NCBI GenBank assembly: GCA_026770705.1
Contig: JANJGN010000034.1
Span: forward strand, 11,346,001 to 11,410,000
DNA from: Isurus oxyrinchus
Lineage: Eukaryota
Direction: 5' to 3'
Length of the DNA stretch: 64,000 nucleotides
Part shown: positions 21,641 to 62,273 of the stretch, in pieces
How positions within the stretch are numbered: position 1 is the first letter of the stretch
Layout of the letters: each line of letters starts with the position of its first letter
The notes under the pieces: generated by a model
The model's database searches: none
What the model saw: the letters and a program-made list of their open reading frames with translations, nothing else
Told to the model about the DNA's origin: nothing
Program-made: the position numbers and the translations under genes

Positions 21641-24600
21641 ACCTGGATGATACCATGGAATAAATGGTTGAATTATGGAGATTATGTGATCTTCCATTTC
21701 ATGAGCTTTGGAAGCTGGTGGAAGATCTGAATGGGAAGTTTAATATTATAAGCGGACCTAGTTGATAGAGAAAAAAAATTGCCTCTGCACGGAGGATCAA
21801 GGTTACCAAGACATAGTCTAAATTTTGAAGTTGCTTCGAGGGGAATGAGCGTTTTTCATATGTTGCTCATCACTAGTGCACCAGAAGCTATTAACGGTCT
21901 TCTAATTAAAGTACTGAGTTGAACAACAGAGCAGAGGTGTGGCTGGAGGCCATAATGTTTCACCGTCATAGGCTGCAGGAGGCTTAGAGGAAAGGGCTCA
22001 GTGATCAAAGTAACAAAGTGTGACATCTGAAAATGATTACGGCATTGGTATTGCTCTGTCAGACAGGAAAACCGACTTCCAGAAAGAGAGACAGTGATGG
22101 ATGATGCGAAAATGAATGGTGCTTATCATTACTTTCTAGAGTGATCCGAGAGTAATTCGGCAGCTTCGGTGCGGCAATGTGATGCTTGATGTATCCCACT
22201 GAGATTTGGTTAAGTATAGCTCAACCAGCTGTGTGCAGAAACAATAATGGCAATTGCCTGATGAAATAGAGACAGGTGTCATTGCAAGGGGGACAACCCG
22301 AATTGGAAACAGCAAAGTTATTCCTGGAAACATTAGATTAAACGTGTGGATAAGTTATTGGTTGAATACATTGCCAACTGCAGATGTTTCACGATGAATT
22401 GAAAGGAAGAGGTAAGCCAGCTGACACATTGAAAGCGGCTTCGTCAATGAAAAGCAGACATTTTGTTCTGTTTCCAGAGGAAATCAATAAGGGAAGTGGG
22501 GAGCAATTTGTAAGTGTGTGATGAAGACAATCGACGTCGGGAATCCAGTTCATAGGTGGCACTGTATATCAATAGCAGGAATTATGTGAAGGGAGTGGTT
22601 TACTGATCTCAGAATGGGACTGACTTCAGAGGAGGGAAGGCAAACTGAGCTTAGATGCAGACTAAAATCATAAACGCAAGCAATCGCTCATTAGAGATTG
22701 GGAAACGATATTTAATGGTGCATTATGCTGGTGGCAGTTTAAAAATATATATAAAGGAGACGGAGAGAAGTCTACTGTAACAGCATCCTCATGGATTTGT
22801 TGTCCTCCTGCTGTAGCGAATCGCGAGCCAACAATGCCCTGGAAGTCAGCAAGAAGTTACGGTCTGTGGAAGCAAAATGGAAATAATTTTGATTCTAAGC
22901 ATGTACAAACAATATTTGGTGAAATGCATTACTTTCGGGAAATAGCATCACTTTATTATTTTTCGTAGCAGCATTCTAAGCTGCTGCAAGGGTGAAGTCT
23001 ATTGATGATGCGTCATATTATATAACCCACCAGAATCCACTTGGAAACAAGATATGATGTGTGTCCAGAAAATATAATTACTTGAATGCTGGAAATTAGT
23101 AACAATTGGATTTGTTTCTTCAGCAATGCACAGTTGGAGTTCATGCCTGATAGAGGATCATTCAATGTTATTTTAAACAATGTGTTTGAAAATTGATCTC
23201 CAATGATGTTGCTCAGGTGCGGATTCGTTGGCATAACAATAGAGTCCAGGGACAGCGCATGACAGGAACTGGTTTGCACAAACACAGGTACGGTTTACAC
23301 CGTGGGTTGCAGGTTAATCAAGAGCATAAACATTGAATTTCCTACTCTCCCCATCTTCAATGTCAGATACTTGGTAGAGCTGCTAGTAACAACATATCAT
23401 ATTTTCAAACTTCCGAATATGATATTTACTCAGTGTGGAATCATTTGGAACTGCACTTTCTTTCCAAGCCAAGATGGTCAATATGTCCTGCAGAGGTTGG
23501 CCGCCAAAGCTCAGCAAGCCTGATAAGTGGATTCAGAAACTGCCACGCTATCTCGTGATGCCAAAACGATAAAGTCCAGACTAGGAGATTTCACCCACCT
23601 ACACCCTAAGACCATCGAAAGGACATTTTGAATTAAAATTGCCTTTATTAAATAAAGTCAGCGATGGCATCAACCCTACTCATGATGAACGTCTTCCAAC
23701 AAGAAACCAGGTTATGGATAATTTAACCAACACCATATTTGGAAAGGGGAGCTGTGAGAAGTCAAATGTTGGGTAGACATGTCTGTTCTGGCTTCATCTT
23801 TAAGTATTGTGTGCTGAGCCACAGGATCAGCAGAAAGGGCAGGACGTTAATGTCTGCAGACTGTAAAACTATAAGGTCTTCAAGCCTGTTCCTTTTCAGG
23901 AACACCAACACTGAAAACTGATGTTCTGGTAAAGAGACTAGAAGCATTCGTGCCCTGAAAAAAGTCAATCTCTTCGATAGAATCCTGATAACCACCTCAG
24001 CACGTGACTCCGGCTGTTGAACTTAGTTTCAGAGCCTGAGGAGAATATACTTCATCTGATGTTTTAAAAAGTACATTATTCATCGTCATGACCACTGATC
24101 ATGGAACCAAATTACTTACAACATGTTGAAACTTTCAGTAACTATTATTTTTTTTTAATTGCCCCACAAACATAAATTGGCTAGTACTGTAATGCCACCA
24201 TTTGCCGGAAAATTCCGATGTGGATTGCACTTGTCCAAATAGTCCAAAAGACAGAATATTGCACCTAATCAATGTTTTCCAGAATAGGGCAGTCACGTCA
24301 ATCATGAATTAATCATTTTCTTTATAACTTTTAGAAGAGCACTAGGCACTTCAATTGCACATTCTCTGAGTGCATATTTGCATGTAAATGTGTGAGTAAA
24401 GGCTATAATGTTAGATTGAGCGTGAAAATAAGCAATTATCTTTATTTAAACGCACAATCAGGAGGCTACCGGTTATTCAACTTGTCCACACTTTCAAGGG
24501 ATAATAAACACGTGTCTTTCCTTCAAAATGTTACTGATTACAGACAACTGGGAAGGGAGCAGAGATTTCCCTGCTTCTCTCGGTCACACTGTCCGTAACA

Positions 24601-25099: not shown

Positions 25100-25124
25100 C
25101 TACCACTGAATACTATGAGGACAC
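25100..25124 (-). CDS. Gene C candidate terminal coding exon (R)CPHSIQW*
   Basis: Nearest acceptable phase-2 acceptor (tgtgatctccag); other terminal exons are possible. Confidence 0.3.
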
Positions 25125-25442
25125 CTGGAGATCACAATTGAACACTGCCTTGTCATGTGATATTCCTGCCTTGTGAAGAAATGAGGAGACAAGACGCTGT
25201 GGATACCGAAAGGATGGCTCCCCTTTGAGGGAGAAAGTGGATCAATGAGACAGAGTTTTAAAATAAGGGTCATAATCAGTGCAGCCACGAACTTATTAAA
25301 TAGTGGAGGAGATTGGAAGGAGCCGAATGGATTTCTCAGGCTCCTGATTCGTCTGCACGTTTGTTCTTAAATGGAAAATCCTACATTCCGTTTGCTTTTT
25401 TAAAAGATGGCAGATGACGTGTGAAATGTTCTTTCAACATAC

Positions 25443-25486
25443 CTCATCAAGTCACTGTAAACCGACCGATCGTGCACTTGTAATCC
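25443..25486 (-). CDS. Gene C cytoplasmic exon GLQVHDRSVYSDLM(R), second half of the ITAM
   Basis: attttaacag / 44 nt / gtatgt; phase 0 to 2. Confidence 0.9.
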
Positions 25487-25616
25487 CTGTTAAAATTAAT
25501 AATATATTTGTTTTTTTAGTGAACAACAATAGAGTGCGTTAAAAGAGAACTGAGGTGAAATATAGGATAAATAGTCAGTAAATGAAATAAAAGAATGCAC
25601 AAAATAATATCCTGAC

Positions 25617-25658
25617 CATATAAGTAGAGTCTTCCTCAAGTGGTTTTGTAGCTTGCTC
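25617..25658 (-). CDS. Gene C cytoplasmic exon EQATKPLEEDSTYM, first half of the ITAM
   Basis: gcatttttacag / 42 nt / gtcagg; phase 0 to 0; joins the next exon to give STYMGL-x7-YSDL. Confidence 0.88.
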
Positions 25659-26134
25659 CTGTAAAAATGCAATTTGAAAAACGAAATATGAGCAGGTACA
25701 CAAGATTTCCATGTAATTACTTCATAATTTAGAACGATTAGAATGTCATATATCCCACAATAAAAGTTCTACCAATTTCCCTAAAATAACTAGCCCCAAA
25801 TTAAATTTCAGGGGTGAATGTTCATTACTAACACGTGGTGAAAGAGGAGAAACAGCATACAGAATATTCATTTCACTCAGCACTCGGTTATCATGACTGT
25901 AGTAAAATTGAAAATTGACGCCAATATTCCATGCTGCAACAGGAGCATTGTTTGATAATCTTATAAAAACAGGAACCAGTCCACTAACCGAGTAAGGCAA
26001 AGAACACCGAAACCCCTACCCTAGTCTGACTTATTGCCGAATCGAGTTTACTCCGATTGCATGAACAATGACATTGTTATCCTCACTGGAATGAACTCGC
26101 CAATGTGACCATGTTTTAATACAATTGTACCAAC

Positions 26135-26199
26135 CTTTTGCTTTCTTGGAATATTTTCGTAGGCCGATGCTGAATTCTCCCCTATTGCAGCAGGGCTGC
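26135..26199 (-). CDS. Gene C cytoplasmic exon (S)SPAAIGENSASAYENIPRKQK
   Basis: tttttcattctcacag / 65 nt / gttggt; phase 1 to 0; YENI motif. Confidence 0.88.
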
Positions 26200-26249
26200 C
26201 TGTGAGAATGAAAAACAGTTAATCACATCTCCACATATAATCGCAGAAG

Positions 26250-26650
26250 CATACAATGACAGAGCACAATCGGAGGTCTTTTAGCCCACCATGCCAGTAT
26301 CAGCTCTTTGAAGGTGAAATACAATTAATCCCATTCCTCAAACATTTTCGCACACCCTTGTAAGTAAGCTTCCTTAACGTGCATTTCCAACGTCCTTGTC
26401 AAACTGATATTCAATATGATTCCAACAGATGTTCATGTTATGCAACCCGATCATAGCAATTCGCTGCCTAAATATAAATTTACGCCTCACGCAGCTGTCT
26501 TTTTGGGAACTAGATTTCATTTTTACCTCATATGGCTGCTTACAGTTTCTCCTAATTTCCTCTATCACGATATTTCGCGATTTTGAACACCTCTGTAAAA
26601 TCTCCCATCAGCCTCCCTGCTTTAAGGAGAATAAGCCCAGCTACTCCCAT
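26250..26650 (-). mobile_element. Intronic CR1 3' fragment
   Basis: ggaggtcttttagcccacc...ttttgaacacctctgtaaaatctccc...aaggagaataagcccagc. Confidence 0.65.
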
Positions 26651-27573
26651 TCCTCCACGGAGCTACTTCTGTAAATCTGCAGTACACACTTCTCAAGACA
26701 GTAACATTAGTCCTGAATCATTGAACCATGTACATGCCAATAGAGTGAGAACGGTTGCTTCATGTTCTGAGGAATTGCAGCTTTTGTTTCTTAGTTTTCT
26801 CTTTCTGTTTACTGGGGTGGACTCCGTTCGTGCTAATTTAATGATTACTTGAGTTGTAGGGTCAATTTTACGAACTAAGGGTACACGTGGAACAGCCGTA
26901 ATCAAGGAATGAAAATTGGTGGGAATCTAGTTCTACTTTTTTCAATATAACGCAGAAGAGATATCAAATCGGCTGCTGGTTCGCCATCATCTATTCTACA
27001 TTAGAGAGATGCGCGGAATTGTCCTAGGTATTTCATCATGTGGGTGTTCCTGAAGCTGACAGATTCACACTTTGAGCACCCAAGTAGCAGAAAACACAAT
27101 GGTTAGTTCCAGGCAAAACCTTTGTCTCACCGTCAGCTCTGTATGTGTACACAAATCTATTCGGTTTTGAACTTTCACGAGGAATGTACAACTCACTGTA
27201 AAATGAAGCATTCGCATGAAAATAGATACAGAAGCATATATTGGATGTTATTGGTGTCAACGTATTTTCAGTCAGATATAATTTGCACGAACGATTGCTT
27301 CTTTTCACCATTCACAAGTTAGTGAAACCTATATGAAACAGAATGTTGAGCGATAGCCATGTTGATCTGAACTTTTTTTCAAATAGTGTTTAGTGCTGGG
27401 CAATTGTGCATAAAAGTGCTCAACAAGCACAAGATTATCTAAATTGATGTGCAAACTTAAAGATTCATAAATCTGCCCGATGTATGCTTATTTGAATGAA
27501 CTTCAACTCATAAAGCACTATTGACCCCTGCAACCAGACATTCAACATGGAAATGCTAAAGTATTTCACTTAC

Positions 27574-27629
27574 TATTTTCTGTTGGATTAATGTTTGTAG
27601 CATTTTGCCCTTGCGTTGGTTGTTGCATC
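27574..27629 (-). CDS. Gene C first cytoplasmic exon (W)MQQPTQGQNATNINPTEN
   Basis: catttctttag / 56 nt / gtaagt; phase 2 to 1, matching both neighbours. Confidence 0.88.
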
Positions 27630-27799
27630 CTAAAGAAATGTAGTGCAACATAATAAAATAAACATTTTCAGGACGATATAATATTGCAATCATGATCTGC
27701 AACAGAAATCCTATTTGTTAATGTCTTATTATTAGTGAAAAATATCTTCCTAACTGGAAGGAACAAATTTCATTCATGCTGGGCAACATCGATATTCCT

Positions 27800-27930
27800 T
27801 TATTCTTTTGCCGGACGTGGGCGTCGCTAGCTGAGCCAGCATTTTTTATTGCCTATCCCTAATTGCCCTTGAGAAGACGGTGGTGAGCCGTCTTCCTGTG
27901 CCGCTGCTGTCCATATGGCGTAGGAGCACC
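27800..27930 (-). mobile_element. Short LINE 3' tail fragment
   Basis: gtgggcgtcgctag...gccagcatt...gcctatccctaattgcccttgagaag, same tail as the 39770 element. Confidence 0.7.
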
Positions 27931-28214
27931 TAAAACAGTTTGAGTATTTGGAAGATGCAAAACTGAGTAACTGCATCAGCAACAGTAGTGGGGTGTTATC
28001 ATACCAGAGTGGGGAACTAACAGTAGGTGATTTTTGTCAGTCAGAAACATAAACGATTATTATTGACTGTGTAAACCTGACTTATAAGTATATAGACTTG
28101 GACAGACACATAAACATATTTTGAAACAACTTTTTGCGCATTTCCTTTGATTCAATTCATCAGGCTACAGACAAACTACTAAAGGTGCAGATAACATTTA
28201 CATAGACTATTTAC

Positions 28215-28338
28215 CAGCATGCTTTCTTTTTGATCAGCCACGCGCATATCCCACCGATCGTTCCCAGAATAAGTAGAACAGCAATCACGATGCCTGCTTT
28301 GTGACCACTGCCTAATTCAGTGGTGGAGGAATGTTGTC
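28215..28338 (-). CDS. Gene C transmembrane exon QHSSTTELGSGHKAGIVIAVLLILGTIGGICAWLIKKKAC
   Basis: ttattgcattttcag / 124 nt / gtaaat; phase 1 to 2; AGIVI start as in CEACAM-type TM exons; KKK stop-transfer. Confidence 0.92.
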
Positions 28339-29149
28339 CTGAAAATGCAATAAGAACAGATATTGAAATTAATATCAAATGCCGGAATCAATTAAACTCC
28401 TGTAGCAATGGGCCAGTATTTAAACACATTTTGCCATAGCGCTTGCTTGCTGCTAAATTTCAACAATCCAAGGAATAAAAATGGCCATCACAGTGTTCTT
28501 TCGAGCCAATGTGACACGTCATTTAAATACAAGCCTCTGCACCTGCAAGGGCAGCAAGGTAATTGAGTCTTTACGCTCTTGATCCCAAAATATTTTTAAA
28601 AATTTTCTCTACAGCTCTTAATGGGCCAAACAATTGCTGAGCTCAATGAATTCAATCCCGACTGTTGGCCGTGTTGTCTTCCAATTTTTCAGGAAGCGTT
28701 TCGTTTGATTCCCAAAAATATTAATTCCTTTCCTCAACTGAAGCCTACATTTCACATCTTGTCAACTTTCTTTTTCTTGTGTCTTGAAACCAGTTGGATT
28801 TCCCTTGGCAGTCCCCTTCTGTTTCTCATCTACCTGATGCATCAGTGGCAACATGCCAAAACATATAGCTAGATTTTATGGGGCGCTATGGTCCCCATAC
28901 CCAGGAGTGAATAAATCGCGAACCAGCCAATCCACACTGCTGGCCCCTGCATGGAATTTCCTATGCCGAGCAGACAGATTGAGGGATAAGTGCGATGTTG
29001 GGGTGGGAGAGGGGCTGAAGTGGACAAGCCAGTGTTGGGAGAGGAAAAGGGAGACGGAAGACCTGCCGGTCCCTCCAATGCGCTATAAAATTGGCCATAT
29101 CTAATGTCTTGAAAACAGGGTGCTAGCCATTTGCCCATCGTCAAAATGG

Positions 29150-29540
29150 ATGCAGAAACAGACCGCATTAAATCTACTCCTCAGGGAAATGTTCACTGTG
29201 TAATGGACAAAGTCTCAATGTGCCAAACGCCACCACTTTTGGACGAGGAAAGTGCACTTTCTAACTCAAGTTACCTGGGATAGGCAATATTTCTCAAAAC
29301 TTTGACCACCCGTAAAAGCAAGCCGTTTCTCGCTGCTACCATGCAGTGTCTCCGTGAATGGTATTTTCCACTAACAAGATGCTGCCTCAGCCCAAAAAGA
29401 ATGCTCTGCCTATCACACAACTGAGCACCGCCATGCATCAATTGCAGTGCCGTTGTGATGCCATATGTGTAGGCCGTATGTCCCAGTGATTGGCTGATCG
29501 AATCAAGCAGCGTGTTATATTGGTTGTTCATAAGAGTGTT
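29150..29540 (+). mobile_element. Intronic Penelope GIY-YIG remnant
   Basis: QCRCDAICVGRMSQ*LADRIKQRV, homologous to the element at 7629-8039. Confidence 0.75.
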
Positions 29541-29723
29541 AAACGTTAAAAACAAAGGTAAAAGTACAGCCTAGGGAACAGATACTGATATCTTGAAGTA
29601 GCATAACCTAATATGGCCAAACTGAAACCTAAATATAATTTTGATATGCACAGTACGTCTTTAATCTGGAAATCTGTAATTGCAATGCTTGTTATTCCGA
29701 CGATGCATTTGGCAACAACTCAC

Positions 29724-29789
29724 TTTGCACATCCTCTTGTGTGTTGAGTTTCTCTGGGCCACTGACTAAATCCAAGTGACCCTGTCCTC
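29724..29789 (-). CDS. Gene C short extracellular exon (G)GQGHLDLVSGPEKLNTQEDVQ
   Basis: ctgctctcctttag / 66 nt / gtgagt; symmetric phase 1-1, open. Confidence 0.75.
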
Positions 29790-30951
29790 CTAAAGGAGAG
29801 CAGCACTAACACAGAACAACTGAACCCACAAATGATAACGTGTATGGCGGTAAAGTGGGATTAGTGTCGCAGAATTGAGTTCCCACAGCTATATACATTC
29901 TTACAGCAATGAGTGGTTCTCCCTCTTTAGTGTACTGGAGATGGACAGTGTATAGGCAAGCGAGGGAATTCATGCCTTTGATTTTTAAGACTACAGCCCT
30001 GTATCTGCGAAATGCTGAGTCAAGCACAGTGGTTTGCCTATTGAAGCCACGCTCTAATTGCACCAAGCAAAGCAAGGGGGAAAACAGCCCAGTAATAATT
30101 ATTTATATATATATATATTTGGTCACTCAAAGATCAAACGTAAGATTTTTCCCACAAGAAAATCAGCGCTTCTAATTTGAGGAGAAATATTTGTTAAAGC
30201 AAGTCAGAAATAGTTATTTTTAAAATAGCATTGGTGTATGTAATTGGGAAATCATTGCATGAGCAAAATTTATTTCTATTTATGCTTCGCAGTCTTCAAA
30301 CTGAGCCTGTTACTGCATAAATAACAGATGTTTATGCATTTTGGTAGTAAAATGTCAGAGCCTCTCCATGCACATGGAACGCGATTACCGAGTCTCTGCT
30401 CATTCTTACAAACTTCACCAGTTCACCTCTTCGCAATGTTCATATTCAAGTAAATATTAATGATGTCACATGCTTTCGGAAAAAAAAAACATCTAAGTTT
30501 AGCGAAGTTCCGGATTTTCGGCAGCCATAGCACAATTTAGATAAATTCACAAGTAAACACCAGAATTGTGAAATTGAACCTGGGAGGGACGTAAACCAGG
30601 TAATATTATACATATTTCCAGTTACAAGCCTCGCACTAAATTCAGGTCCATTTAAGTATATGAAATTCATTATTGAACGTGGTGAATAACAAGAGAGAAA
30701 TGCAACACCGCCCAGCATGCATCCTTGTCCGGTCTAATATCCCTCGCTAATAATTGGCGCACTAACATTTTAGGATAAGTCGATGTCTACATGATAAATA
30801 TCCGAAATATGAGTGCATGTTAACAATTGTGTTTTAGCTTGTTACAGTCTATATCTATTCTGGTTGTGGTTGACTTGCAGTAACACAGCACAAGTTTGAA
30901 CCATCCCTGATTAATTCAGTTTTTATTTGTAATAAAAAAACTTGCAAATAC

Positions 30952-30988
30952 CAGTCAGCATGAATAGAGAAAAGATATAATCCTGCAT
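30952..30988 (-). CDS. Gene C leader exon MQDYIFSLFMLT(G)
   Basis: atcATGc start, hydrophobic core, phase-1 donor CTG/gtattt; a possible acceptor at 31054-31055 implies an upstream exon. Confidence 0.65.
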
Positions 30989-33600: not shown

Positions 33601-33617
33601 ACCATGTGCGAGAACCC

Positions 33618-39769: not shown

Positions 39770-41720
39770 TTCGTTCATGGGAGGTTTCAATTACTGCCAG
39801 GCCAGCATTTATTGCCCATCCCTAGTTGCCCTTGATAAGGTGTTGGTGAGCTGCCTTCCTGGGACACTGCAATCCACATAGAGCACGTGTACCCACACTG
39901 TATTTGAGAGGGTTGGGTGTGGTGGTGGGCTGGTGTTTCCAAGATTTTCTCCCAGCAATAGTTGAATTTCCAAGTCAGGGGGGTGTGTGGCTTTAGGTTG
40001 GGGGCGTAGAAGGGTGGTGGCGATGGTGGACGTCCTGGTGGTTGTCTTCCCACTTGTCTGCTGCCCTTCTCCTCCGAGATAGTCGGGGTCTTGGGTTTGG
40101 GATGGGCTGTCTAAGAAGCATTGGTCAGCTCCTGCAGTGCAAGTTGCAGATGCATCGACATTGCTGCTACTATGCGTCGGAGGTGGAAGGAGTAAATGTT
40201 TGTGGATGAGCTGCCAATCAAGTAAGTTGCTTCGTCCTGGATGGTGTTGAGTTTCATGAGTGTTGTGGGAGCTGCATTCATCCAGGCAAGTGGGGAGTAT
40301 TCCATCACACTCCTGACTTGTGCCTTGTAGGTGGTGTACAGCCTTTGGGGAGTCAGCAGCTGAGTTACTCGTCACAGAATTCCCAGCCTCTTACCTGCTC
40401 TTGTCACCATGCTATTTATATGGCTAATCCAGTTCAAGTTATGGACAATACTAATCCCGAGGTTATTGGCAGTGTGGGATTCAGTGATGGTAATGACTTT
40501 CAATGTCATGGGGCAGTGAATAGATTTTCCCTTTTTGGAGAGGTTCCTAACAATTGTGTGGCACGAATGTTACTTGCTACTTGCCAGCCCAAACCTGGAT
40601 ATTGTCATGGTCTTGCTGCATTTGGACATGGATTGCTTCAGCGTCCGAAGGGTCACAAATGGTACTGAATTTTGACAATCATCAGTGAACATACCTCCTT
40701 CTGACCTTATAATGGGAGGAAGATCATTTATGAAGAAATTGACGATGGATTGGGGGAGGGGATTATCCCGATGAACCCACGCAGCGATGTCCCAGAGCTG
40801 ATATGATTGATCTCCAACAACTAGAGCCAACTTCCTTTGTGCGAGGTAAGACCCCCACCAGCCGACAGCTATCCTCCTCTTATCCATTGATTTTACTATT
40901 GCAAAGGCTCCTTGAAGCCACATTCGGTCGAATGCAGCCTTGATGTCAAGGGCAGTCACTCACACCTCAACTCTGGAGTTCAGATCTTCTGCCGATGTTT
41001 GAACCAAGGCTGCAATTGTTCAAACCATTACAGGAACTGAGCGATTTTTGTGGATCCCAAAGTTGGCACTGGTGAGTTGGTTATTTCGAAGCAAGTGTTG
41101 CTTGATAGCACTGCTGGTGATCCCCTACATCACTTTTCTGACTGTAGGGAGAAAACTGTTAGCGCAGTAATTGGCTGGGTTGGATTTCTAATGCTTTTTG
41201 TGCAGCGAACGTACCTGGGCAAATTTCCACAATGGCGGGTAATGCCAGTGCTGTAGAAGCCAATGCTGCAGCTGTACTGGAACAGCATGGCTAGGGTCGC
41301 AGCAATTTGAGAAACATAAGTCTTCAGTTCTGTTGCCACAATATTGTCAGGGCCCAAAGCCTTTGCAGTATCCAATGCCTTGAGCTGTTTGTTGATATCT
41401 CATGTAGTGAACCGAACTGACTGAAGACTGGCACCTGTAATGCTGGGGAACTCCGGCGAGGTCGAGATGGATCATCTTGGCACTTATGGCTGGAGATTGT
41501 TCCAAAAGACTCAGCCTTATCTTTTGCATTCACGTGTTGGTCTTCCCCATCATTGCGGATGGGGATTTTTGTGGAGCCTCCTCCTCCAATGAGTGGTTTA
41601 GTTGTCCACTACCATTCACAATTGGATGTGGCAGGACTGCAGAGCTTAGATCTGATCCGTTGATTATGGAATTCTTTAGCTCTGCCAGGTTAGCAATGGT
41701 GGCACCAGAATTGAACCTGG
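39770..41720 (-). mobile_element. CR1/L2-group LINE, ~2 kb 3' portion, decayed
   Basis: KALGPDNI; ALDIKAAFDRMWLQG; FFINDLP..MFTDDC RT motifs; EYSPLAWMNAAPT C-terminal region; 3' tail. Confidence 0.93.
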
Positions 41721-42898
41721 GGAGATTGTGGTGCAGTACCATTAACACTGTATTCGTAATTCAAAGGCCCAGCATAAGGCCCTGGGGACATGGGTTCAAC
41801 TGCTACCACAATATCTAATGGACTTTAAATTAAATTAATAAATCTGGAATATAATGCTCGTCTCAGTAATGGTGACTAACCAGGGCAACTATCAGTCATA
41901 GACAGATAATCAAGCTGGTTCACTAATGTCCTTTGGGGTAGGAAATCTGTGGTCCCTAACACTTATGGCTTCCAAACACACAGATATGTGGTTGACTCTC
42001 AACTGCCTTCTGAAGTGGCTTAGTAAGCCATTCAGTTCAAGGGCAATAAGGGATGGGCGGCAAATGCTGGCCTTGCGAGTGACACCCACATTCCATGATT
42101 TTTTTAAAAATAAATGCCAAGGTCTCCTGAATCTGATGATTTCTAATCACGTTTGTTGAATACATATGTACATTTGGAGTTCAGGGATGGAGAGGATATG
42201 ATTCCTGCTGTGAGCTGCAATTTTAAAATGTGAGATCTGTACAAACCTGCTGGGCACATACAGCAGTATGGTTGCATCAAAATGTATTGTTCTGAGAAAA
42301 AATATCTATTAAAATTTGAGTTGGACAATTATGATTCTTTCCCTCAAACCAGTCTGAAGTTCATCTTTTATCGGATTTAAAAATAAACTTACTAACTTCA
42401 TTGAAAATATTCGTAATGAAACCCGAATTTTCACTGAAGCATCACACAACCGTTCAAATACTACGTACAATAAACTCGTATGCGTTACATCATCTGGTGT
42501 TCCCGCTCGTAGAATTAAGATTGAGCCGTTATGTCTAATGGCTTCTGGGATCATACCACAATAAGTTCATCACCCCCAAAAGTTAATTCATTTAAGATTA
42601 GTCTGTAAACAAAGAAGTGTATAGCCAACAAATACTGTTCAATACTATCAATTATCAATGAACATATATTGTATGATGAGTTCTGTCTCAAAAACATCTA
42701 AGTATTTCGAGTATACTTAATTAAATAAATAATCTCTGAGGCAATATTCCTTGGCAATGTAAAAGTGTTGAGCTATTAGTTTACATGTTTCAGTAAATAA
42801 TCCTTATATGCAAACAATCATTTATTTCCCTTTTCCAATCTGAAATGTAGCAGGTATGGTGATAAGTTACAAAAATAATGATCTGTTGGAGCACCTGC

Positions 42899-43192
42899 AG
42901 CTACCATTTAGATTGTTTCGGTCACTTGTTACTCTGCAAAAGGAGTTGAATGCTTGGCACTTGAATCGTCCATCAGACCTAATCACTAGTGATATATAGT
43001 GAGAAATATAGTGAGAGTTCTATTACCACCACTTAGATCAAAGCTGCTATCCGTAATAATAGCGCGATTATCCTCAAGCCACTGATATGAAACTGCAATG
43101 CCTGATACGATGCATGTCAGATGTCAATACGGTGTCATTGTATTTGACTGTGTTGGTGACATTGGTGATAATATTAGGTTTATAAACAGGTT
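42899..43192 (-). pseudogene. Gene A, copy 2: CEACAM-like IgC2 pseudoexon
   Basis: Same frameshifts as copy 1 but retains the second Cys (GRFKCQAFNSF). Confidence 0.85.
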
Positions 43193-46100
43193 CTGTCAAA
43201 ACACAGGAAAGTAGGTATCAGACCTTAAAAGTAAATTTGGAGGATGGTGGATTTAGCTCCAAGTTCTAAAGGCAGCATTTCATTTTGAATTTTCATCTGT
43301 TGTTTCCTTTCGGTAATAATTCCTGTGATGCTGGTGTTAATAATTCTACGATCTTTATCCCCACCCCACTACCCCCACGCAACCCCCACCTCCCCCTCAC
43401 CACACGTGCCCCGCACACCCACACCCTCCGCCCCCAACGAGGTAAACCTGTCTCCTTGAATTTATTGCTCACTTAGAATATCAACTTAAATAAATTTCCA
43501 ATCATGAAAGGAACATAGCCTACTAAACCAATTACAGACTCGGTCCTAAAATAAAATGTCCTCTCCCCGAAGACCTCGAACCTAATGTATTTATTTGAAG
43601 ATAGAACATGCGTAGAGGTATCTTATAGCAGACTGAACTGTTGTGGAGTTTCCCAAAATCAGCTCTTCGGATTCTAACTTCGACTCCTAGGATATTTTGA
43701 TCATGTATGTGGGCTCGCGGGAGAATATAGATTGGGGACTGCAACTCTTGTGCACTTACTTAATACATGTTTTAAATCAAAGCCAAATATATATTACAGC
43801 TAATACATGAGACATATAGATGATAACTAAATCAAATCATATCATCTCAATAATATTTAAGGGAAATACATTTTAACCCACCATAATCAGCAGTTTTTTT
43901 TTGCATAAAAAACAAATATCAATTAAAGGTAATCATACGCACAAACCATTGTAATTACTCAAGATTCTGGAGTGTCTTTGTCTCAAATATAGGGATTCCA
44001 AGCTTAGACTGATACTCATTCTATGGCTGCAAAGAAGGCCAAAAGATTGTTGACCTATGGGCAACATTACCATCTGTCTGTTTAGAAACATCGCAGCTGA
44101 ACACAAAAAGGCTTTTGTCATGCATTGGTGTTTGTGATTCCAAAAGAAAAAGCAGTGAATGAAAATAAGCTATTTATCGGATCAATGTCATTGGTGAGTG
44201 TAGATAAGAGACATTTACAGACTAAATGGAAACATTTTGGTTGGCAGCCTTTCAAATAGTAGAGAGACAATCCAAAGGCTTTTTTGGTTATCTTTGGACT
44301 TGAGATCCTCGCAACGATTCATGTAGTGTATCCATGCTATAATATCAAGCTATATGCCTAATTGCTTTCCTCTATTAATGTTAATTAGTGCGTCTTAAAT
44401 TTGCAATAATTGTGTCAGGTTTGTCACACGGTGAACTTAAACCGTGCAAGATCTATCTGTTGATCCCTGAGATTCAGACTGCGCAGCAGAGACCAGGACT
44501 CCAGTAATATAACATTCTGCCCTTCTCATCATTCTCAAAATAAGAGCCAAACTACTCACTGCAATAAAAAAAGTTTCTCCTCATAATACTTTTGTTTATT
44601 TTATTGATTACTTTAAATTGGTGTCCTCACGTTCTCGATCCATTTCTACTGGGAATAGGTTCTCCCTAACTACTCTATCCAAACCCCTCACTATTCTGAT
44701 ACCTCCATGGAGCAGTTCCACTGTTGAGAAACCTACAGCTGGAATTTTAGCTTGATGGCGCAGCTGGGCTGAGTGCCAGTCAGAAATCGGGCTCCAGAGG
44801 CTCTTGATGTTTCTCACTGCTCGCTCAGCCTCTCCGTAGCTTGGAAACGGAAAGGCAACTGCTGACAAGAGCGATCCCATTGAGCTTGGCAAATTTTCTA
44901 AAGTGCTCATGGAAGGATTGTGGTCTGCAGTGAGACGGTTTTATCTGGAAACCCATGTGTGTAAAGTATGGCCAGCAGCATCTTGCACGGTTTCGTCCAT
45001 CACCTCATAAACACAGGGCGGGACTGGTGGACTAATAGACTGCAACAAGGCGGCAGCAGCCCGCCGTTCGCATGTAGGGTGTTGAAAGGAAGACACAGGG
45101 GTCCGCCCCTATGTCGTCAGTGGCCAGGCTGCCCCCTGCCTCTCACTCCAGCGCGTTTATGGGCCGGCAGCTACTGCAACGCCAACTGGGGAATTAGCAA
45201 ATTAACTTTTTCAACACTTCTTTCGCGTGACCGCCGTGCACCAGGGCTGTGCTGGAGAGCGCTACCTCGAAACAGGAAGTGCTAAATGTTACCCGCGCTG
45301 CGGCAAGGCCATAGAGACCGAGCATTTAACGTCTGAGCTGTGCACTCGCTGCCCCTCCCCAGCCACCAGTGAGCACAAAGGAAGTCACTATTGTCACAAG
45401 CATAGCAAGGTGCTATTCCGTGTCGGGGGCCACCCCACACTCCGTCATATCACCTCTGAACCAGCATTTTGAAAATGACACAGGCACTGCTCCAACATGG
45501 GCCACTGGACGTATTCAGGTTTCTGGGCAGTTCAACTTCCACAAAGTCACAGATTCTTGAAATTCTCCATCCCTGATGTTGTCTGAATAAATCAACACCG
45601 AGACCGTGAGTACCGATCCACCCGATAATAGGAAGCCCGTGCAGTGTCCATTCTCCAGGTGTTCTTCAAAAGCAGGAAAGCGGAAAATTGTGATATTTGA
45701 ACAACTTGTTTGGAAAAGGTCAGGACACCGGAACATTTCACACAAAAATGCCGAAGACACGAGATATTACTCCCAGATCAAGAACTGGCACGTTGCATGG
45801 TGCTGCGCCAACCCAGTTAAGTGGGACCGCTGATTGTCTCCCGCTCCAGCAATGTCTCAAGTTTGAAAAGGTTAAATGGCACTAAGTCCGAGTCACCTCT
45901 TAATCTCCGTGAGCCCCTTCTGTCCCCTGAAATCACAGCGATCCTCCAATTCTGGTCTCTGAATTACCCCGAACATTAATCACTCTTTCACGGTCGGACA
46001 TTGCTGTTCACCTGCCTCAGTCCTAAATTCAAGAAATCCGATCCTGAACATTTCCACTTCTCTACCTCTACCTGTTCAATAAGCAGCTTAAAACCGTTCC

Positions 46101-49100
46101 CTTTCACCGAGGTTACAGTCACTTGTCCTCTTTTTTTGCCCGGTGTCAAATTGAATTTAGTAACAGCGCTAAGAAGCAGCTCGTGACGCTGTGTTAGGTT
46201 AAAGGCCTATATAATTGTTAGGTTGTCTCGTTTTGTTTACTGGCCCTGTGTTATTGAAAGGATGACCTTAAATCGCCAGTGGGTGGAATTTCTCCCTGAG
46301 CCGGCAGCACAAATCGTGTGCGGTCACTTTGGCCGCCCATTAAAGCCCGTCGCCGTACCCCACGGCTCTTCCCCACACTCCGAATATCGGACCCCTCGCC
46401 GGCTTAGATCTGGTTTCCCGTTCCTATTTAGATCATTTGACCTCCTGGCGAGGAGGAGGCTAACGGAAGATGGCCGGCGACAGGGAAGTAATGCGATAAA
46501 GGCCGCAGATTCCTTCTACGTTCAACTGCGGCAGCAACACTGGGTACTCAGCTCTGAATGGACGGAGGTCAAGTCCGATGTTTATCGTCCCTCCCTATTC
46601 CAACGACAGACTGACCGATACCTTTCTCCCTGAATACTCAGTTCCTTTACCCCGCCTCAGTCGACGGCTCCACTGGGTTTGCGGGGGGTGGGGGGTTTGG
46701 TGGGGGCGGGGGGGCTGGGGGTGGGGGGGGGGGCGATGGGGACGGATGGGTGGAAATGCTTTGCCTCCGACTGTCACATTTATCTGAATGTTTTCTTTCA
46801 AGGTACTTAAACCCTGGGGATCAGCTAAGGAAAGGTAATCACATCAGTGAAGCGAAGCGGCCAAACTCGACACGGCATTTTCTTTTCTAAACTGATAATT
46901 CCTGTTATATTTTAACCTAATTCTCTGACAAGCTCTTTTTGTCTTCCTTCTCTATCTTTAAAAGAAATAATACGAGACATTGATACTCACCTTTATCCAT
47001 TAATAAGCAAAGAGCGACCACAGTTAAAAGGGGTCTGATCAACCCAAGAAAACCTCGCCCACTGTCACACTCTCGGTACAACTCGGTGACTGACCCGCAC
47101 TTCCTGGTGTGCAGAACAGATCAGGTCAATCATTGGCTAAAGCTGCAAAGCTGATTGGACCGAGTGCTTTTAACCCGACTGGAAACCTCACTTCACAGAA
47201 AAGCAGCTGCATATACATTCGAAATTAGGCTTGGCCTAAATAGCCAAGTGGTTATGGTACTGGGTTTGTAACCTCAAGAGTTCAAATCTCACAATGGCAA
47301 ACTATGAAACAATGTAACTTCATCTGAATAGGAACAGATGGAAACGTGTTTGTACTCGAAAGAGTTACTGCAGAAATTATTGAAAATATGCAACGAAGTC
47401 TGTTTATTGTTAGTTGAGCAATTAAAACATTTCTCCAGGAATTAAAACATTAAAACATTTTAAAAAAATCTCCGGGAATGTATTGCTAAAAGGTGAGTTT
47501 CAACTGGAAATGATTATTCCCTGGCCTACAATTTTAATCTAATTGGATAGTCCATTCAAAGGTTCCCGCTGATTGGCCTCCTTCTATAGTGGTGGGGGAC
47601 GGCGGGGGAGGAGGAAGGTGCATGGTGTCATTTATTCATTATGTTTTGCGGCTTAGTTGCCAACATTCTTGCTGTGAGCCGGTACGTTGTGGGTGCCATT
47701 TCCCACTCACGCTGTCCGCCACTGTTATGTGGCCTGCAGTCCTTCCAGTTCTCCACACGGGTCACGACTGTGAAAATAAACAAAAAGAGACATACATTCG
47801 TGTTCAGATGCTGTGCTTTTGGCATTGCTGTTCCCCTCCACCACCCCCACCCACCCCCGACCCCCACAGCCCCACACACCCCACCCATACCCCGCCCGCC
47901 GAGTTATCATACCAACAATGAATGCTCCTTCGGGAGGCAATTAAAATCGACCACAGATTAGGAGAAGCATGAGTTCTTGACAGTTTGGCAACATGTCAAT
48001 CAGAGGATATCTGGGAGCTTCAATCGAACATTTGGCCGAACATTTCACAAACAAACATGTCGGCAGCAGATCATCCATGACGTGGCACATCCGGAGTTCA
48101 ATGTTCAGGTGCAGGAAGGGTAGGGGATGAGGTAGGACTGACCAAGGGTAGGCCCACAGATTACTGACTTTCTGTTTCCGTGTTAAACCTATACTTGGTC
48201 CTACGTATTATATAAAAATTTTACGAAGCTGTCTTATTACAGAGAGCATATTTGTCCTTGCACTCGCTCTCTGAAAAACCACACTCAGTTTAGTCACTCT
48301 TCTTGTCATGCGTTTGTGCCCTTCGTATTGCATTGCGCATTGTATCCAAATAATCGTTCAGTAGTATCGAAGTTGAGTATTGCTGAAAAATTGACATGCA
48401 ATCAAATCTTTTCCTCTTCCACTCATCTGAATAGCTCGCAAAAATTGTAATGCGGGAAGAACAATTTATACTGCATGAGCAGAGAGTGTTGAATGGTTGG
48501 CAATAGGATTCTGATTAATGGAGTTGTTGCCATGGAGAATGCAGCATGAGACAGTTAGCTGCTCAGCTTTGTTAAAATTAAAGCCAGGCAGGACGACTCT
48601 GATTAGTGTAGTTGTTGCCCTGGGTAATGAAGCAGCGAATGAATTTTCCATAAACATATCTTTGGATGCAAGAAGGTGCAACATGTGAAAATGTTCATTT
48701 TGGTTGCAAAGGACAGGAGCCTGTGAGTGAATATATGTGAGCTCTAGGAGACACAAGTGAGCCACACTGCCACCTGACCGATAATGTTAAATTGCATTTC
48801 AGCATAATTCTTCGCACAATCAGGATTATTTGGCAGCTGTTGTCCTAACGTGGACCTTCGCCCTAAGTTGGACACTATATTTTGAGAGCTTTGCAAGCAA
48901 AGCCTGATTGGGGATAGTTAGTACCTTCCTTCCCTGTTGTGAACAGCCGAAGGGACATGCTGTTTGATACGACCTTCCAAATGCTGGGACGTATCGCCGT
49001 TGTACCTGACAATACACTGGCACTGAAATTCAAAGACCACATGGCCAATTGGTGAGTTAGGCCAAAAGCCTTTTTGGCTTGATGGCAACGTCCTTTTAGT

Positions 49101-58100: not shown

Positions 58101-59597
58101 ACAAAAGTCGAGTGACATGTGGACAGAGGAAAAGCCATTCAGTCCCGCAGATCTGTTTTACCATTCAATGGGAGCATGGTGCATTTAGTCATAGAGTTTT
58201 ACAGACAGAAAAGAGGCCCTTGGGCCCATCTTGTCCACGCCAGCCATCAAGCTCCTCTATAATCTAATCCCATTTTCCAGCACTTGGCCCGTAGCCTTGT
58301 GTGCTGTGACGTTTGAAGTATTCATCTAAATACTTCTGAAATGTTCATAGAGTTCCTCCCTCTACCAGCCCCTCAGGAAGTGAGTTCCAGGTATCCTCCA
58401 ACCTCTGGTGATTTTGTTCCCTCAAATTCCCTCTAAATCTCCTGCCCCTTACCTTACACCCTTGGCCAATGATTATTGACCCTTCCACTAAGGGCAAAGG
58501 TTTATTCCTGTCTCGCCTATCAGCGTCGAGATAACATGTAACCTTAGGGCACTAGAAGCTCCTGCACGAATGTTGGAAATGATGAAAGTCAAAAAAGAAA
58601 TGAACTCTCCTGAAACCAATTCCACGAATACTGGCCAAGGAAATGAAAGGGGTTTGCTTTGGAATGAAGAGCATATAAGGAGGGTTTATATTAGAGTTTC
58701 AGTTATGTCATGATTTTGTGCCTTATTCAATGGTCACCGCCCATTTGGATGCGAATTCATGGTCCAATCACCTTTCTGATAACATGTCCTGTTCCGCACT
58801 GCCTTCCCTTGTCCTCTCCCACACACCAATACCCAAATGGAATGCTGTCCCCTCCCCTACTCCCATTACCAGTGAACTCCACAGCTCCCATCACCAGACC
58901 CTTCTGCACTGATCTCACCAGTCCCTCTGACACTCATATCACATAGCCTGCACCACACTCCAGCCTTAGATCCACTTCCTCGCCCCTCTCAGAATTCCAT
59001 CCACAAAACTCATCCTCCTTGACTAGTTTGCCCAGTCCTGTCACCCACTCCGATCACTTTTTCACATTTCGAGTCTAATCAACTTACACCTCTCCCACTC
59101 TGATCCCTTTAGGATCTCACAAGAAGGAAGCTAATGGGAGATAGCTGCCAACAAGAAAGAAGCGTGAATTAGAGAGTGGACTTGTAGGCTTGCTTGGTGT
59201 CTCAGCAAGAGGTGTGGAGGTTTGTGTGGTTGAGGATATAGCATATATTGTTAACACACAGCTATATACATATCTCCAAGGTATAGCCCAAGGTATAGCT
59301 GTTTTCATGCTGACTGCTCTCAGACTCTCTACACACTGTATACTATCATGTGATACTCTACATCACAATCTGGGCAGTATTGCTCTCTAGTCCCATATTA
59401 ACTCCTGCATGCCCAACTATACTTATACTAAATTGACTTCGTCAATGTTCATGAGTGACATTGGGTGCACAGCTCTGGGTGGGCGGTTATCAGAATCGGC
59501 AGCCTCCGTGCACTCCTCCTATCCTCCCCATGCGTAAACCGCATTGCTGATTGTGGTGTCTTCGCGCAAGCGCAGAGCGAAACGCCATATCACTTGC

Positions 59598-60405
59598 CAG
59601 GGAAATTCTTTCACTTGTTTGCGCTCTTGTGGGCGCAGTGTAATCTCCACCGTCCCACACTGTCAAGGGCTTCAGTAGGAGTGATCCGTTAGACAGGACC
59701 AAGGCTGTATTCAATTGTACTTTTTTAATTGTGAAGCTGGACGGACCGTTCCACACCAAGAATTTTGTCTTCCCGAAGTACCACGACCAACTCTTCACAC
59801 CATCTGAGGGTTTAACTGAAAGAAAAATGCTGTTTTTCCGAAGGTCCCATTAATCCGATTGTTTCCTGTCAGAGACAGTAAAACCCTGGGGCACAGATGA
59901 GGAAAATAAACCCGCAACGAGAAAGGCGGTCACACTCGGCACATCGTTGGCTTTTCTGTAACGATGTTGATAGTGTAATCTCCACTGTCCGAACCTCTCA
60001 CTGAATTCAGCAGGAGGGATCCGTAAGGGAGGAATAACTCAGCACGTTCATAGCGTTCTATCAGAGCCTGCATGGAGCCACTTCGCGATACTTTTGTCCC
60101 CGAATTGCCATCTCCCATTCCGCACCACAGCTGACGGCTCCACCCGAAAAATCTACAGTGTTTCCTCCCACGGTCGCTTTAATCCGACTGTGTACTGAGG
60201 AGAGAAATCCAAAGTAATAAGAGCGGTCAAACTCCACACAACCTACACTTTTCGAAAGTGATAATAATAACATCCACTGATTTGCCCTGAGAATCTCGTG
60301 CTGTCGTTCTTCTCCAAACCTTAGCAAGAGAGATACGAGAAAGTGATCCTCACCCACAGGTATCAATAAATAAACATGTCCCGCGCTAAGTGTCAGTCTC
60401 CACAT
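59598..60405 (-). pseudogene. Gene B, copy 2: leader (60354-60405) plus two IgV pseudoexons (~59936-60194, 59598-59865)
   Basis: Shares both copy-1 frameshifts and has an extra 8-nt deletion near 60058. Confidence 0.85.
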
Positions 60406-62093: not shown

Positions 62094-62273
62094 NNNNNNN
62101 NNNNNNNNNNNNNNNNNNNNNNNNNNNNNNNNNNNNNNNNNNNNNNNNNNNNNNNNNNNNNNNNNNNNNNNNNNNNNNNNNNNNNNNNNNNNNNNNNNNN
62201 NNNNNNNNNNNNNNNNNNNNNNNNNNNNNNNNNNNNNNNNNNNNNNNNNNNNNNNNNNNNNNNNNNNNNNNNN
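62094..62273. other. 180-nt N block
   Basis: Run of n with flanks identical to those of 20823-21008. Confidence 1.

What the first reader, a model, noticed from the sequence alone, without database searches (positions are those of the whole stretch)
25100..30988. Intact-looking Ig-less single-pass membrane protein with ITAM plus YENI: candidate novel signalling adaptor
Seen: seven GT-AG exons with matching phases (1,1,2,1,0,0,2) give MQDYIFSLFMLTGGQGHLDLVSGPEKLNTQEDVQRQHSSTTELGSGHK-AGIVIAVLLILGTIGGICAWLI-KKKACWMQQPTQGQNATNINPTENSSPAAIGENSASAYENIPRKQKEQATKPLEEDSTYMGLQVHDRSVYSDLMR with no stop. I found no intact Ig exon in the 1.2 and 1.4 kb introns before the TM. Known: E/DxxYxxL-x7-YxxL is a canonical ITAM, YxN is a Grb2-SH2 motif, and DAP12/FcR-gamma/CD3-zeta have short ectodomains but carry a TM Asp and a dimerising Cys. 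Inference: this protein lacks those and instead has GxxxG (GTIGG) and TM-proximal Cys (possible palmitoylation). It may be a CEACAM-like receptor that lost its ectodomain and became an adaptor by a different route. The ORF track misses it because the exons are tiny.
Basis: partly seen in the sequence, partly recalled or inferred. Interest (0 to 1): 0.85.

Follow-up and report, generated by a model that had tools for sequence, protein, structure and literature searches.

The report
Shark CEACAM tail without working ectodomain
These exons are the membrane anchor and activating tail of a shark CEACAM-type immune receptor gene whose antibody-like exons lie broken far upstream, so it looks like a decaying receptor copy, not a new adaptor.

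Summary
Only exons 3-7 (TM exon and four cytoplasmic exons, 28338-25443, minus strand) have support. They are 92% identical on the TM exon to RefSeq XP_041032829.1, "CEACAM4-like" of the great white shark, built leader-IgV-TM-YENI-ITAM. The same tail occurs in shark and ray CEACAM-like proteins: YEN[IF]P in 14 of 17, ITAM core in 12 of 17. RNA-like contigs show the E3-E4 and E5-E6 splices.

Exons 1 and 2 match no family protein and have no RNA cover. Exon 1 is one of 36 comparable candidates.

The Ig exons are not lost. They lie 15-32 kb upstream and are all broken: leader with TTG for ATG, truncated V, frameshifted C2, and two further dead V exons behind an intact leader.

The locus is a roughly 41.3 kb tandem unit. 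First readers noted the same tail in other copies of the array; none was followed up.

Most likely this is a receptor pseudogene copy with a still-intact tail. An Ig-less product remains possible: basking shark RefSeq lists one. Known kind; modest interest.

The parts
28215..28338 (-). E3: short stalk, transmembrane helix and juxtamembrane Lys-Lys-Lys-Ala-Cys. Phase-1 acceptor, phase-2 donor.
   Evidence: phmmer: 92% identity to XP_041032829.1 residues 125-164, E 7e-14. RNA contigs of a paralogue cover it and join it to E4.
27574..27629 (-). E4: first cytoplasmic exon
   Evidence: 74% identity to P0001 residues 166-184. Joint 27631/28217 skips 585 nt, the length of the predicted intron, in X1 and X8.
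26135..26199 (-). E5: cytoplasmic exon with YENI (a YxN motif)
   Evidence: RNA contig pieces lie on 26134-26199, one with 1 mismatch. YEN[IF]P is present in 14 of 17 family proteins.
25617..25658 (-). E6: cytoplasmic exon ending in the Tyr-Met of the first ITAM YxxL. A phase-0 intron splits the motif.
   Evidence: Joint 25657/26134 (GT..AG on the minus strand) is seen in X1, X8 and X9.
25443..25486 (-). E7: rest of the ITAM (Gly-Leu ... YSDL). It ends in phase 2, so one more exon follows.
   Evidence: A 677-nt RNA contig matches 25443-25487 with 0 mismatches and carries 617 nt more that lie nowhere in 25060-25442.
22857..22863 (-). Candidate start of the terminal exon: strong acceptor, completes Arg, then Pro and a stop. 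Unverified.
   Evidence: The same ending (Arg-Pro) occurs in Mustelus P0010. No RNA was laid here.
29724..29789 (-).
   Evidence: No tblastn hit from 17 family proteins. RNA depth 0 in 3 runs.
30952..30988 (-).
   Evidence: one of 36 candidates. No homology. RNA depth 0.
28339..28378 (-). Intron stretch just 5' of E3 that is open in frame from an ATG at 28378. The homologous stretch supplies the start of basking shark RefSeq XP_078389779.1.
43007..43120 (-). IgC2 exon relic, broken by frame changes on both sides (second copy at 1531-1647)
46739..46843 (-). V3: 5' third of an IgV (N-domain) exon, running into a G-rich repeat (second copy at 5442-5552)
46980..47042 (-). L2: leader exon with TTG in place of ATG and an intact phase-1 GTGAGT donor (second copy at 5689-5751)
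59637..59939 (-). V2: IgV exon relic with a frame change after the Val-Gly-Gly-Asn motif and an in-frame stop (second copy at 18356-18658)
59963..60242 (-). V1: IgV exon relic with a frame change at the same site as V2. This copy has a further break (second copy at 18682-18919).
60354..60405 (-). L1: intact leader exon (ATG, 17 codons plus 1 nt, GTGAGG donor, phase 1). Second copy at 19081-19132.
41497..64000 (.). Second copy in the window of the roughly 41.3 kb tandem unit (matches 1-22731 at 96-99%)

Best explanation
E3-E7, plus a terminal exon not yet located, are the transmembrane and cytoplasmic exons of a CEACAM1-related, ITAM-type (CEACAM3/4-like) receptor gene of a lamniform-type shark. 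In intact relatives a phase-1 leader exon and one to three phase-1/1 Ig exons are spliced onto the TM exon. The tail then signals through its own ITAM and an upstream YxN tyrosine; that signalling step is inferred from mammalian CEACAM3-type receptors.

In this copy every Ig exon of the unit is broken. The copy sits in a roughly 41.3 kb unit that was tandemly amplified after the Ig exons had died. It is therefore most likely a receptor pseudogene whose small tail exons have simply not yet been hit, or are kept alike by exchange with working paralogues.

E1 is a chance ORF. E2 is an unsupported exon-like segment.
For: Shown:
- Exon structure and phases.
- E3 is 92% identical to XP_041032829.1, 'CEACAM4-like' of Carcharodon carcharias, built leader-IgV-TM-tail.
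- E4-E7 match the same protein at 72-93%.
- 16 relatives in sharks and a manta ray; the 14 longer than 200 aa all carry Ig domains or V-like sequence, and most carry the same tail.
- The ITAM is split by a phase-0 intron, and a Tyr motif lies 21 residues upstream. Papers describe both for CEACAM ITAM tails (PMC5112662 and PMC13278318, passages).
- Broken L2, V3, C2, V1 and V2 in both copies of the unit seen in the window. The breaks therefore predate the amplification.
- RNA-like contigs cover E3-E7 only, and the contigs holding E3 continue upstream into sequence that does not lie on E2.

By the CEACAM field's working rule, a stop in the N exon marks a pseudogene (passages).
Against: - The tail is flawless: 331 nt with no stop or frameshift and all ten splice dinucleotides present, while about 900 nt of Ig relics carry at least six lesions.
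- The L1 leader is intact in both copies, and its phase-1 donor fits the E3 acceptor in frame.
- A 677-nt RNA contig carries the window's own version of E7 (0 mismatches in 45), so some copy of this type is transcribed and spliced.
- Basking shark RefSeq lists an Ig-less locus with two isoforms built from just these exons.
- E2 has better splice signals than nearly all background segments.
- The RNA data are thin: three small runs of one sample, held as contigs only.
Confidence: 0.6

Rival explanations
1. An Ig-less, single-pass ITAM protein really is made from these units and is kept by selection. The 5' end would not be E1. It would be either the intact L1 leader spliced in frame past the dead phase-1/1 Ig exons (with or without E2), or a start at the ATG in the intron just before the TM exon, whose hydrophobic read-out could act as a signal peptide. 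The product would be a ligand-blind ITAM/Grb2 docking scaffold.
For: - L1 is intact in both copies, and its phase fits E3.
- The frame is open from ATG 28378 into E3.
- RefSeq XP_078389779.1 and its isoform X1 (Cetorhinus maximus, 127 and 133 aa) start in the homologous intron stretch and contain only TM, YENI and ITAM.
- The tail is intact.
- Window-type E7 is present in a spliced RNA contig.
- E2 has strong splice signals.
Against: - No RNA on E1 or E2.
- Every contig listed over E3 and E4 carries another paralogue's variants (28253, 28255, 28260, 27596) and leaves E3 upstream for sequence not on this stretch.
- No such protein is annotated for a genome carrying this exact tail.
- The array copies differ by only 1-4%, so an intact 331-nt tail is expected without selection.
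- The basking shark models may be 5'-truncated gene predictions.
- The TM has no charged residue, and the short ectodomain has no Cys to pair it with a partner.
Confidence: 0.2
2. The tail belongs to a working receptor gene whose intact leader and Ig exons lie outside what I recognised, for example in a neighbouring unit or further upstream. The broken exons seen here would be bystanders inside very long introns.
For: - Shark introns are long.
- RNA contigs with E3 continue upstream into an unidentified exon.
Against: - The contigs covering E3 are of a different paralogue type.
- The whole unit from V1 (60242) to E7 is in the window and holds no intact Ig exon on the minus strand.
- Both copies seen of each relic are broken in the same way.
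Confidence: 0.1
3. The whole seven-exon chain is a chance alignment of ORF fragments and splice-like dinucleotides.
For: This holds for E1 (36 comparable candidates) and cannot be excluded for E2.
Against: E3-E7 match annotated proteins of at least 10 elasmobranch species exon by exon and are seen spliced in RNA-like contigs.
Confidence: 0.01

Closest known systems
RefSeq XP_041032829.1, 'carcinoembryonic antigen-related cell adhesion molecule 4-like' [Carcharodon carcharias], 235 aa (P0001)
   Same: TM exon 38 of 41 residues identical; E4-E7 72-93% identical. Same YENI, same split ITAM, same GxxxG and Lys-Lys-Lys-Ala-Cys.
   Different: It has a working leader and one IgV domain directly before the TM exon. 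The window's copy has only broken Ig exons 15-32 kb upstream. It ends Arg-Arg; the window's end is not located.
RefSeq XP_078389779.1 and isoform X1, 'uncharacterized protein LOC144671645' [Cetorhinus maximus], 127 and 133 aa (P0002, P0003)
   Same: An Ig-less model made only of the TM, YENI and ITAM exons. Its first 15 residues are the translated intron stretch just before the TM exon, which is also open from an ATG in the window.
   Different: Only 67% identical over the intron stretch plus the TM exon (71% on the TM exon alone). It reads through the E7 donor, whereas RNA contigs here use that donor. These are automatic models whose RNA support I could not see.
ITAM-bearing CEACAM1-related receptors of tetrapods (human CEACAM3/CEACAM4 type; Xenopus and reptile 'endocytic' CEACAMs)
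   Same: Leader-N domain-(C2)-TM layout with phase-1 Ig exons, and a tail on several micro-exons. The first ITAM YxxL is split by a phase-0 intron. A YxN or endocytic Tyr lies 17-21 residues upstream (here 21). Passages of PMC5112662 and PMC13278318.
   Different: No orthology was shown. The synteny markers named in those papers were not looked for. This copy has no intact N exon.
ITAM adaptors DAP12 (TYROBP), FcR-gamma, CD3-zeta (features recalled, not from a call)
   Same: If an Ig-less product exists: a short ectodomain, one TM helix and one ITAM.
   Different: No TM Asp and no ectodomain Cys. There is no sequence relation: the phmmer search of E3 returned only the two CEACAM-like hits. The tail is longer and has an extra YxN.

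Membership tests
CEACAM1-related ITAM-type receptors (elasmobranch CEACAM-like family) | Sequence homology of the TM and cytoplasmic exons to annotated family members | tested here: met
   phmmer of E3: 65.4 bits, 92% identity to XP_041032829.1. tblastn of 17 proteins hits all of E3-E7.
CEACAM1-related ITAM-type receptors (elasmobranch CEACAM-like family) | ITAM whose first YxxL is split by a phase-0 intron, on micro-exons behind a separate TM exon | tested here: met
   E6 ends Tyr-Met in phase 0 and E7 starts Gly-Leu. The feature is described in the passage of PMC5112662.
CEACAM1-related ITAM-type receptors (elasmobranch CEACAM-like family) | Extra Tyr motif (YxN or endocytic) about 17-21 residues before the ITAM | tested here: met
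   The spacing is 21 in the window. It is 21 in 10 and 20 in 2 of the 12 family proteins that have both motifs. Passages.
CEACAM1-related ITAM-type receptors (elasmobranch CEACAM-like family) | Intact leader plus IgV-like N-domain exon in phase 1 | tested here: not met
   L2 has TTG for ATG. V3 is truncated. V1 and V2 are frameshifted or stopped. C2 is frameshifted. This holds in both copies. By the field's rule this makes it a pseudogene member.
CEACAM1-related ITAM-type receptors (elasmobranch CEACAM-like family) | Position in the conserved CEACAM neighbourhood (LIPE, BCL3 and other markers named in the papers) | not tested
   The window holds no such genes that I recognised, and no tool gave the flanking genome.
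Disulfide-linked ITAM adaptors (DAP12 / FcR-gamma / CD3-zeta) | Acidic residue in the TM helix for pairing with a receptor | tested here: not met
   The E3 translation has no Asp or Glu in the helix. The defining feature itself is recalled.
Disulfide-linked ITAM adaptors (DAP12 / FcR-gamma / CD3-zeta) | Ectodomain Cys for dimerisation | tested here: not met
   There is no Cys before the helix in E3, E2, E1 or the intronic extension. The feature is recalled.
Palmitoylated transmembrane adaptors (LAT, NTAL, SIT and similar) | Juxtamembrane CxxC-type palmitoylation motif with several YxN sites and no ITAM | tested here: not met
   There is a single Cys after Lys-Lys-Lys-Ala and one inside the helix, one YxN, and an ITAM. 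The family features are recalled, not from a call.

The most novel reading that the evidence does not exclude
Lamniform sharks turned dead CEACAM-like receptor genes into an amplified set of Ig-less ITAM proteins. The intact L1 leader, or an ATG in the polypyrimidine tract before the TM exon, would be joined in frame to the TM-YENI-ITAM tail. That would give a ligand-blind membrane scaffold for Syk and Grb2 that arose independently of DAP12, FcR-gamma and CD3-zeta. The basking shark RefSeq locus LOC144671645 would be its orthologue or parallel.
Probability: 0.12. Interest if true: 0.7.

Novelty: new member of a known kind. Interest (0 to 1): 0.3.

Why it matters
As it stands, this is one more decayed copy in a fast-turning immune receptor family that gene databases already list.

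It is still useful in two ways. It maps a complete 41.3 kb amplified unit in which ligand-binding exons died before amplification while the signalling exons stayed whole. It also points to a testable question: two lamniform genomes carry TM-ITAM modules without a usable ectodomain, and one of them is annotated as a protein. If such products exist, they would be an independent origin of an ITAM adaptor.

Tried and rejected
- Pfam scan of the V relics and the E3 ORF. It gave only sub-threshold Ig hits (14.3 bits against a cut-off of 21.8) on 1 of 6 pieces, so Pfam alone would not have named the relics.
- Regex hunts for Ig motifs. They found V1 and V2 but missed V3, L2 and C2, which only tblastn with family proteins showed.
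- Self-BLAST of 22700-41440 against the window. There is no second copy of the tail in the window, only a transposon fragment.
- Terminal exon. The acceptor at 25222 that gives a 23-residue end, and three others inside 25060-25442, are rejected because RNA contig pieces stop at 25443 and nothing lies in 25060-25442. The 22863 candidate is kept as unverified.
- Tail-only protein search. It returned 3 hits among 18 candidates and added nothing new.
- Search by sequence in the scan's findings.
- Copy number from the depth of run X2. Rejected as not interpretable, because contig depths are summed.
- dN/dS could not be computed. No DNA of P0001 or P0002 or of other array copies was reachable, and 283 of 323 differences were not listed.
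- Paper searches. No paper in the searched library describes a shark CEACAM ITAM family or an Ig-less CEACAM-derived adaptor. Three papers only state that CEACAM homologues reach back to cartilaginous fish.

Full report
**Observation.**
E1 is 30988-30952, E2 29789-29724, E3 28338-28215, E4 27629-27574, E5 26199-26135, E6 25658-25617 and E7 25486-25443.
- Each internal exon has an AG before it and each has a GT after it. The lengths are 37, 66, 124, 56, 65, 42 and 44 nt, which gives end phases 1,1,2,1,0,0,2 with no stop.
- E5 holds YENI. E6 ends with the Tyr-Met of YMGL and E7 carries Gly-Leu, seven residues and YSDL. This is a canonical ITAM split by a phase-0 intron.
- E7 ends in phase 2, so at least one more exon must follow.

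**What E3-E7 are.**
Only E3 is long enough to search alone.
- A full HMMER scan of 1.84 billion representative proteins with the 40 residues of E3 gave two hits.
- P0001 is XP_041032829.1, 'carcinoembryonic antigen-related cell adhesion molecule 4-like' of Carcharodon carcharias. It has 235 aa and is 92% identical over all 40 residues.
- P0002 is XP_078389779.1, 'uncharacterized protein LOC144671645 isoform X2' of Cetorhinus maximus. It has 127 aa and is 71% identical.
- P0001 reads leader, one IgV-like domain, then directly the TM exon and a tail. In tblastn against the window that tail matches E3 at 93% (41 columns, including the Trp after E3), E4 at 74%, E5 at 72%, E6 at 93% and E7 at 87%.
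- A family search with P0001 gave 16 proteins with E at most 0.001 among 527 candidates. They come from Rhincodon, Scyliorhinus, Pristiophorus, Chiloscyllium, Heptranchias, Mustelus, Stegostoma, Hemiscyllium, Mobula, Carcharodon and Cetorhinus. Their source names include CEACAM3-like, CEACAM6-like, CEACAM7-like and 'uncharacterized'.
- Over the 17 stored proteins, YEN[IF]P is present in 14 and the ITAM core in 12. The spacing from the YEN tyrosine to the first ITAM tyrosine is 21 residues in 10 and 20 in 2. A GxxxG just before the Trp at the end of the helix is present in 12. The juxtamembrane Ala-Cys is present in 5.
- The five without an ITAM are two models that end just after YENIP (P0004, P0007), one without a TM (P0009) and two with another tail (P0014, P0017).

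**RNA.**
- The one run search listed no run on record as RNA.
- I laid X1, X8 and X9 (one sample, one study, 'RNA?' by guess) and X2 (another organism label, DNA-like) on 25060-31059 at 90% likeness.
- The three small runs behave as RNA. They have depth only in the bins that hold E3, E4, E5, E6 and E7, apart from a high-copy repeat at 27660-28059 and a weak patch at 29260-29659.
- They show a GT..AG joint 25657/26134 (E5-E6) in all three runs.
- They show a joint 27631/28217 that skips 585 nt, exactly the predicted E3-E4 intron length, in X1 and X8. The two-letter offset fits a one-letter difference in the paralogue.
- Pieces on E7 stop exactly at 25443 in three records, and the rest of those records (617, 125 and 211 nt) lies nowhere in 25060-25442. 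The E7 donor is therefore used, and the terminal exon lies below 25060.
- All listed contigs over E3 and E4 carry a paralogue's letters. Those at 28260, 28255 and 28253 change Thr to Met and Gly to Ser in the helix; that at 27596 is silent.
- Only E7 appears in the window's own version, in one 677-nt contig with 0 mismatches in 45. One contig piece on E5 has a single mismatch.
- These are contigs of three small runs from one sample. They show presence, not absence.

**E1 and E2.**
- tblastn of all 17 family proteins gives no minus-strand hit between 28339 and 43006. The only hits there are two on the plus strand, with E 0.09 and 0.24.
- E1 is one of 36 ATG-to-GT phase-1 segments of 25-150 nt within 3.2 kb upstream of E2. 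25 of these are at least 45% hydrophobic. It carries no weight.
- E2 is different. Under a strict rule (at least 75% pyrimidines before the AG, GTRAGT donor, 40-200 nt, open in phase 1/1) only 2 segments exist on both strands of the window, and E2 is one. Under a looser rule there are 10, two of which are E2 with two acceptors.
- Both rules were set after seeing E2, so this is a hint only.

**Where the ectodomain went.**
- The window is about 1.55 copies of a tandem unit. Positions 1-22731 match 41497-64000 at 96-99%, with spacings of 41265-41496.
- Read 5' to 3' on the minus strand, one complete unit holds the following:

| Element | Coordinates | State |
|---|---|---|
| L1 leader | 60405-60354 | Intact ATG; phase-1 GTGAGG donor |
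| V1 | 60242-59963 | Frame change after the Val-Gly-Gly-Asn motif |
| V2 | 59939-59637 | Frame change at the same site, plus an in-frame stop |
| L2 leader | 47042-46980 | TTG where relatives have ATG; donor intact |
| V3 | 46843-46739 | Only the first third of a V exon, ending in a G-rich repeat |
| C2 relic | 43120-43007 | Frame changes on both sides |
| TM and tail exons | 28338-25443 | No lesions |

- Every relic is also present about 41.3 kb lower, at 19132-18356, 5751-5442 and 1647-1531, with the same lesions. The lesions therefore predate the amplification.
- The frame changes sit at short T runs, so sequencing error cannot be fully excluded. They are nevertheless shared by both copies.
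- First readers' notes place the same roughly 2.9 kb tail 54 kb before the window, and 2.7 kb and 85 kb beyond it, which is in register with the 41.3 kb period. Some call it an intact signalling module on a dead CEACAM ectodomain. None of these had a follow-up, and I could not read those stretches.

**Most likely explanation (about 0.6).**
- This is the TM and signalling part of a CEACAM1-related ITAM-type receptor gene copy. Its ligand-binding exons died, and the whole unit was then amplified.
- Papers on Xenopus and reptile CEACAMs apply the rule that an N exon with a stop marks a pseudogene (passages seen). By that rule this copy is a pseudogene.
- The clean tail needs no selection to explain it. 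It is only 331 nt, and the copies differ by 1-4%.
- Inferred, not shown: in intact relatives the tail would signal through Src-family phosphorylation of the ITAM and the YxN site, as described for CEACAM3-type receptors.

**Rival: a real Ig-less product (about 0.2).**
- There are three routes that avoid E1.
- L1 is intact and ends in phase 1, E3 starts in phase 1, and all Ig exons of the family are phase 1/1. Skipping the dead exons would therefore keep the frame.
- The intron just before E3 is open in frame from an ATG at 28378.
- The basking shark RefSeq models P0002 and P0003 begin in exactly that homologous stretch and contain nothing but TM, YENI and ITAM. They come in two isoforms that differ at the E4/E5 border.
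- Against this, there is no RNA evidence for any such 5' end here. Three searches found no annotated protein with the window's own tail. The helix has no charged residue and the stalk has no Cys that could couple it to a partner.

**Minor rivals.** A working receptor whose Ig exons lie elsewhere gets about 0.1. Pure chance is refuted for E3-E7.

**Comparison with what is known.**
- Passages seen state that CEACAM homologues with IgV and IgC domains and an ITAM reach from cartilaginous fish to humans. The basis was a little-skate EST.
- A passage from the legend of Additional file 1 of PMC5112662 notes the characteristic split of the ITAM YxxL by a phase-0 intron, and the conservation of Grb2-type YxNx motifs in most ITAM CEACAMs of Xenopus.
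- PMC13278318 notes a Tyr motif 17-21 residues before the ITAM in reptiles.
- The window meets all three tail features.
- It fails the family's requirement of an intact N exon.
- It fails the defining features of DAP12-type adaptors, which I recall rather than take from a call.
- Four paper searches found no description of a shark CEACAM ITAM family or of an Ig-less CEACAM-derived adaptor. The supplementary files, which may hold the exon tables, were closed.

**Verdict.**
- This is a new, probably dead, member of a known and database-annotated kind. Interest is about 0.3.
- The boldest reading still open is an amplified Ig-less ITAM scaffold in lamniform sharks, at about 0.12.

Noticed in passing
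window 1-22731 and 41497-64000: The window holds about 1.55 copies of a roughly 41.3 kb tandem unit at 96-99% identity. Spacing is 41265-41290 over most of it and 41474-41496 in the first 2.7 kb, so the copies differ by an indel of about 200 nt.
   Followed up: partly
window 20823-21008 and 62094-62273: Two runs of N lie at the same relative place in the two copies of the unit (offset about 41270).
   Followed up: no
window 27660-28059 (core 27845-27895), intron between E3 and E4: A very high-copy repeat, probably a SINE-like element. Summed contig depth is in the thousands in the RNA-like runs and above 100,000 in the DNA-like run. Many loose ends on both sides show that it sits in many different contexts.
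   Followed up: no
window 29724-29789 (minus strand): E2 has a near-consensus acceptor tract and a GTGAGT donor and is open in phase 1/1, yet it has no homologue in 17 family proteins and no RNA cover. It could be a newly exonised or cryptic exon.
   Followed up: partly
window 46675-46741 and 5386-5445: G-rich 15-26 nt tandem repeats start exactly where the V3 exon fragment breaks off. The V exon seems to have been cut by, or replaced with, this repeat.
   Followed up: partly
window 59963-60242 / 59637-59939 (and 18682-18919 / 18356-18658): The V1 and V2 relics share a frame change at the same site, just after the Val-Gly-Gly-Asn motif at a short T run. This suggests that an already dead V exon was duplicated.
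   Followed up: partly
window 36058-36120: A perfect 20-nt tandem repeat, 3.2 copies at 100% match.
   Followed up: no
window 40573-40959, 13373-13888, 54652-55182 (minus strand): Reverse-transcriptase-like and other retroelement ORF fragments fill the long gap between the Ig relics and the TM exon.
   Followed up: no
proteins P0002 and P0003 (Cetorhinus maximus LOC144671645): The RefSeq models start in the translated polypyrimidine tract before the TM exon and read through the E7 donor into the intron. The window's read-through frame resembles their C-terminus.
   Followed up: partly
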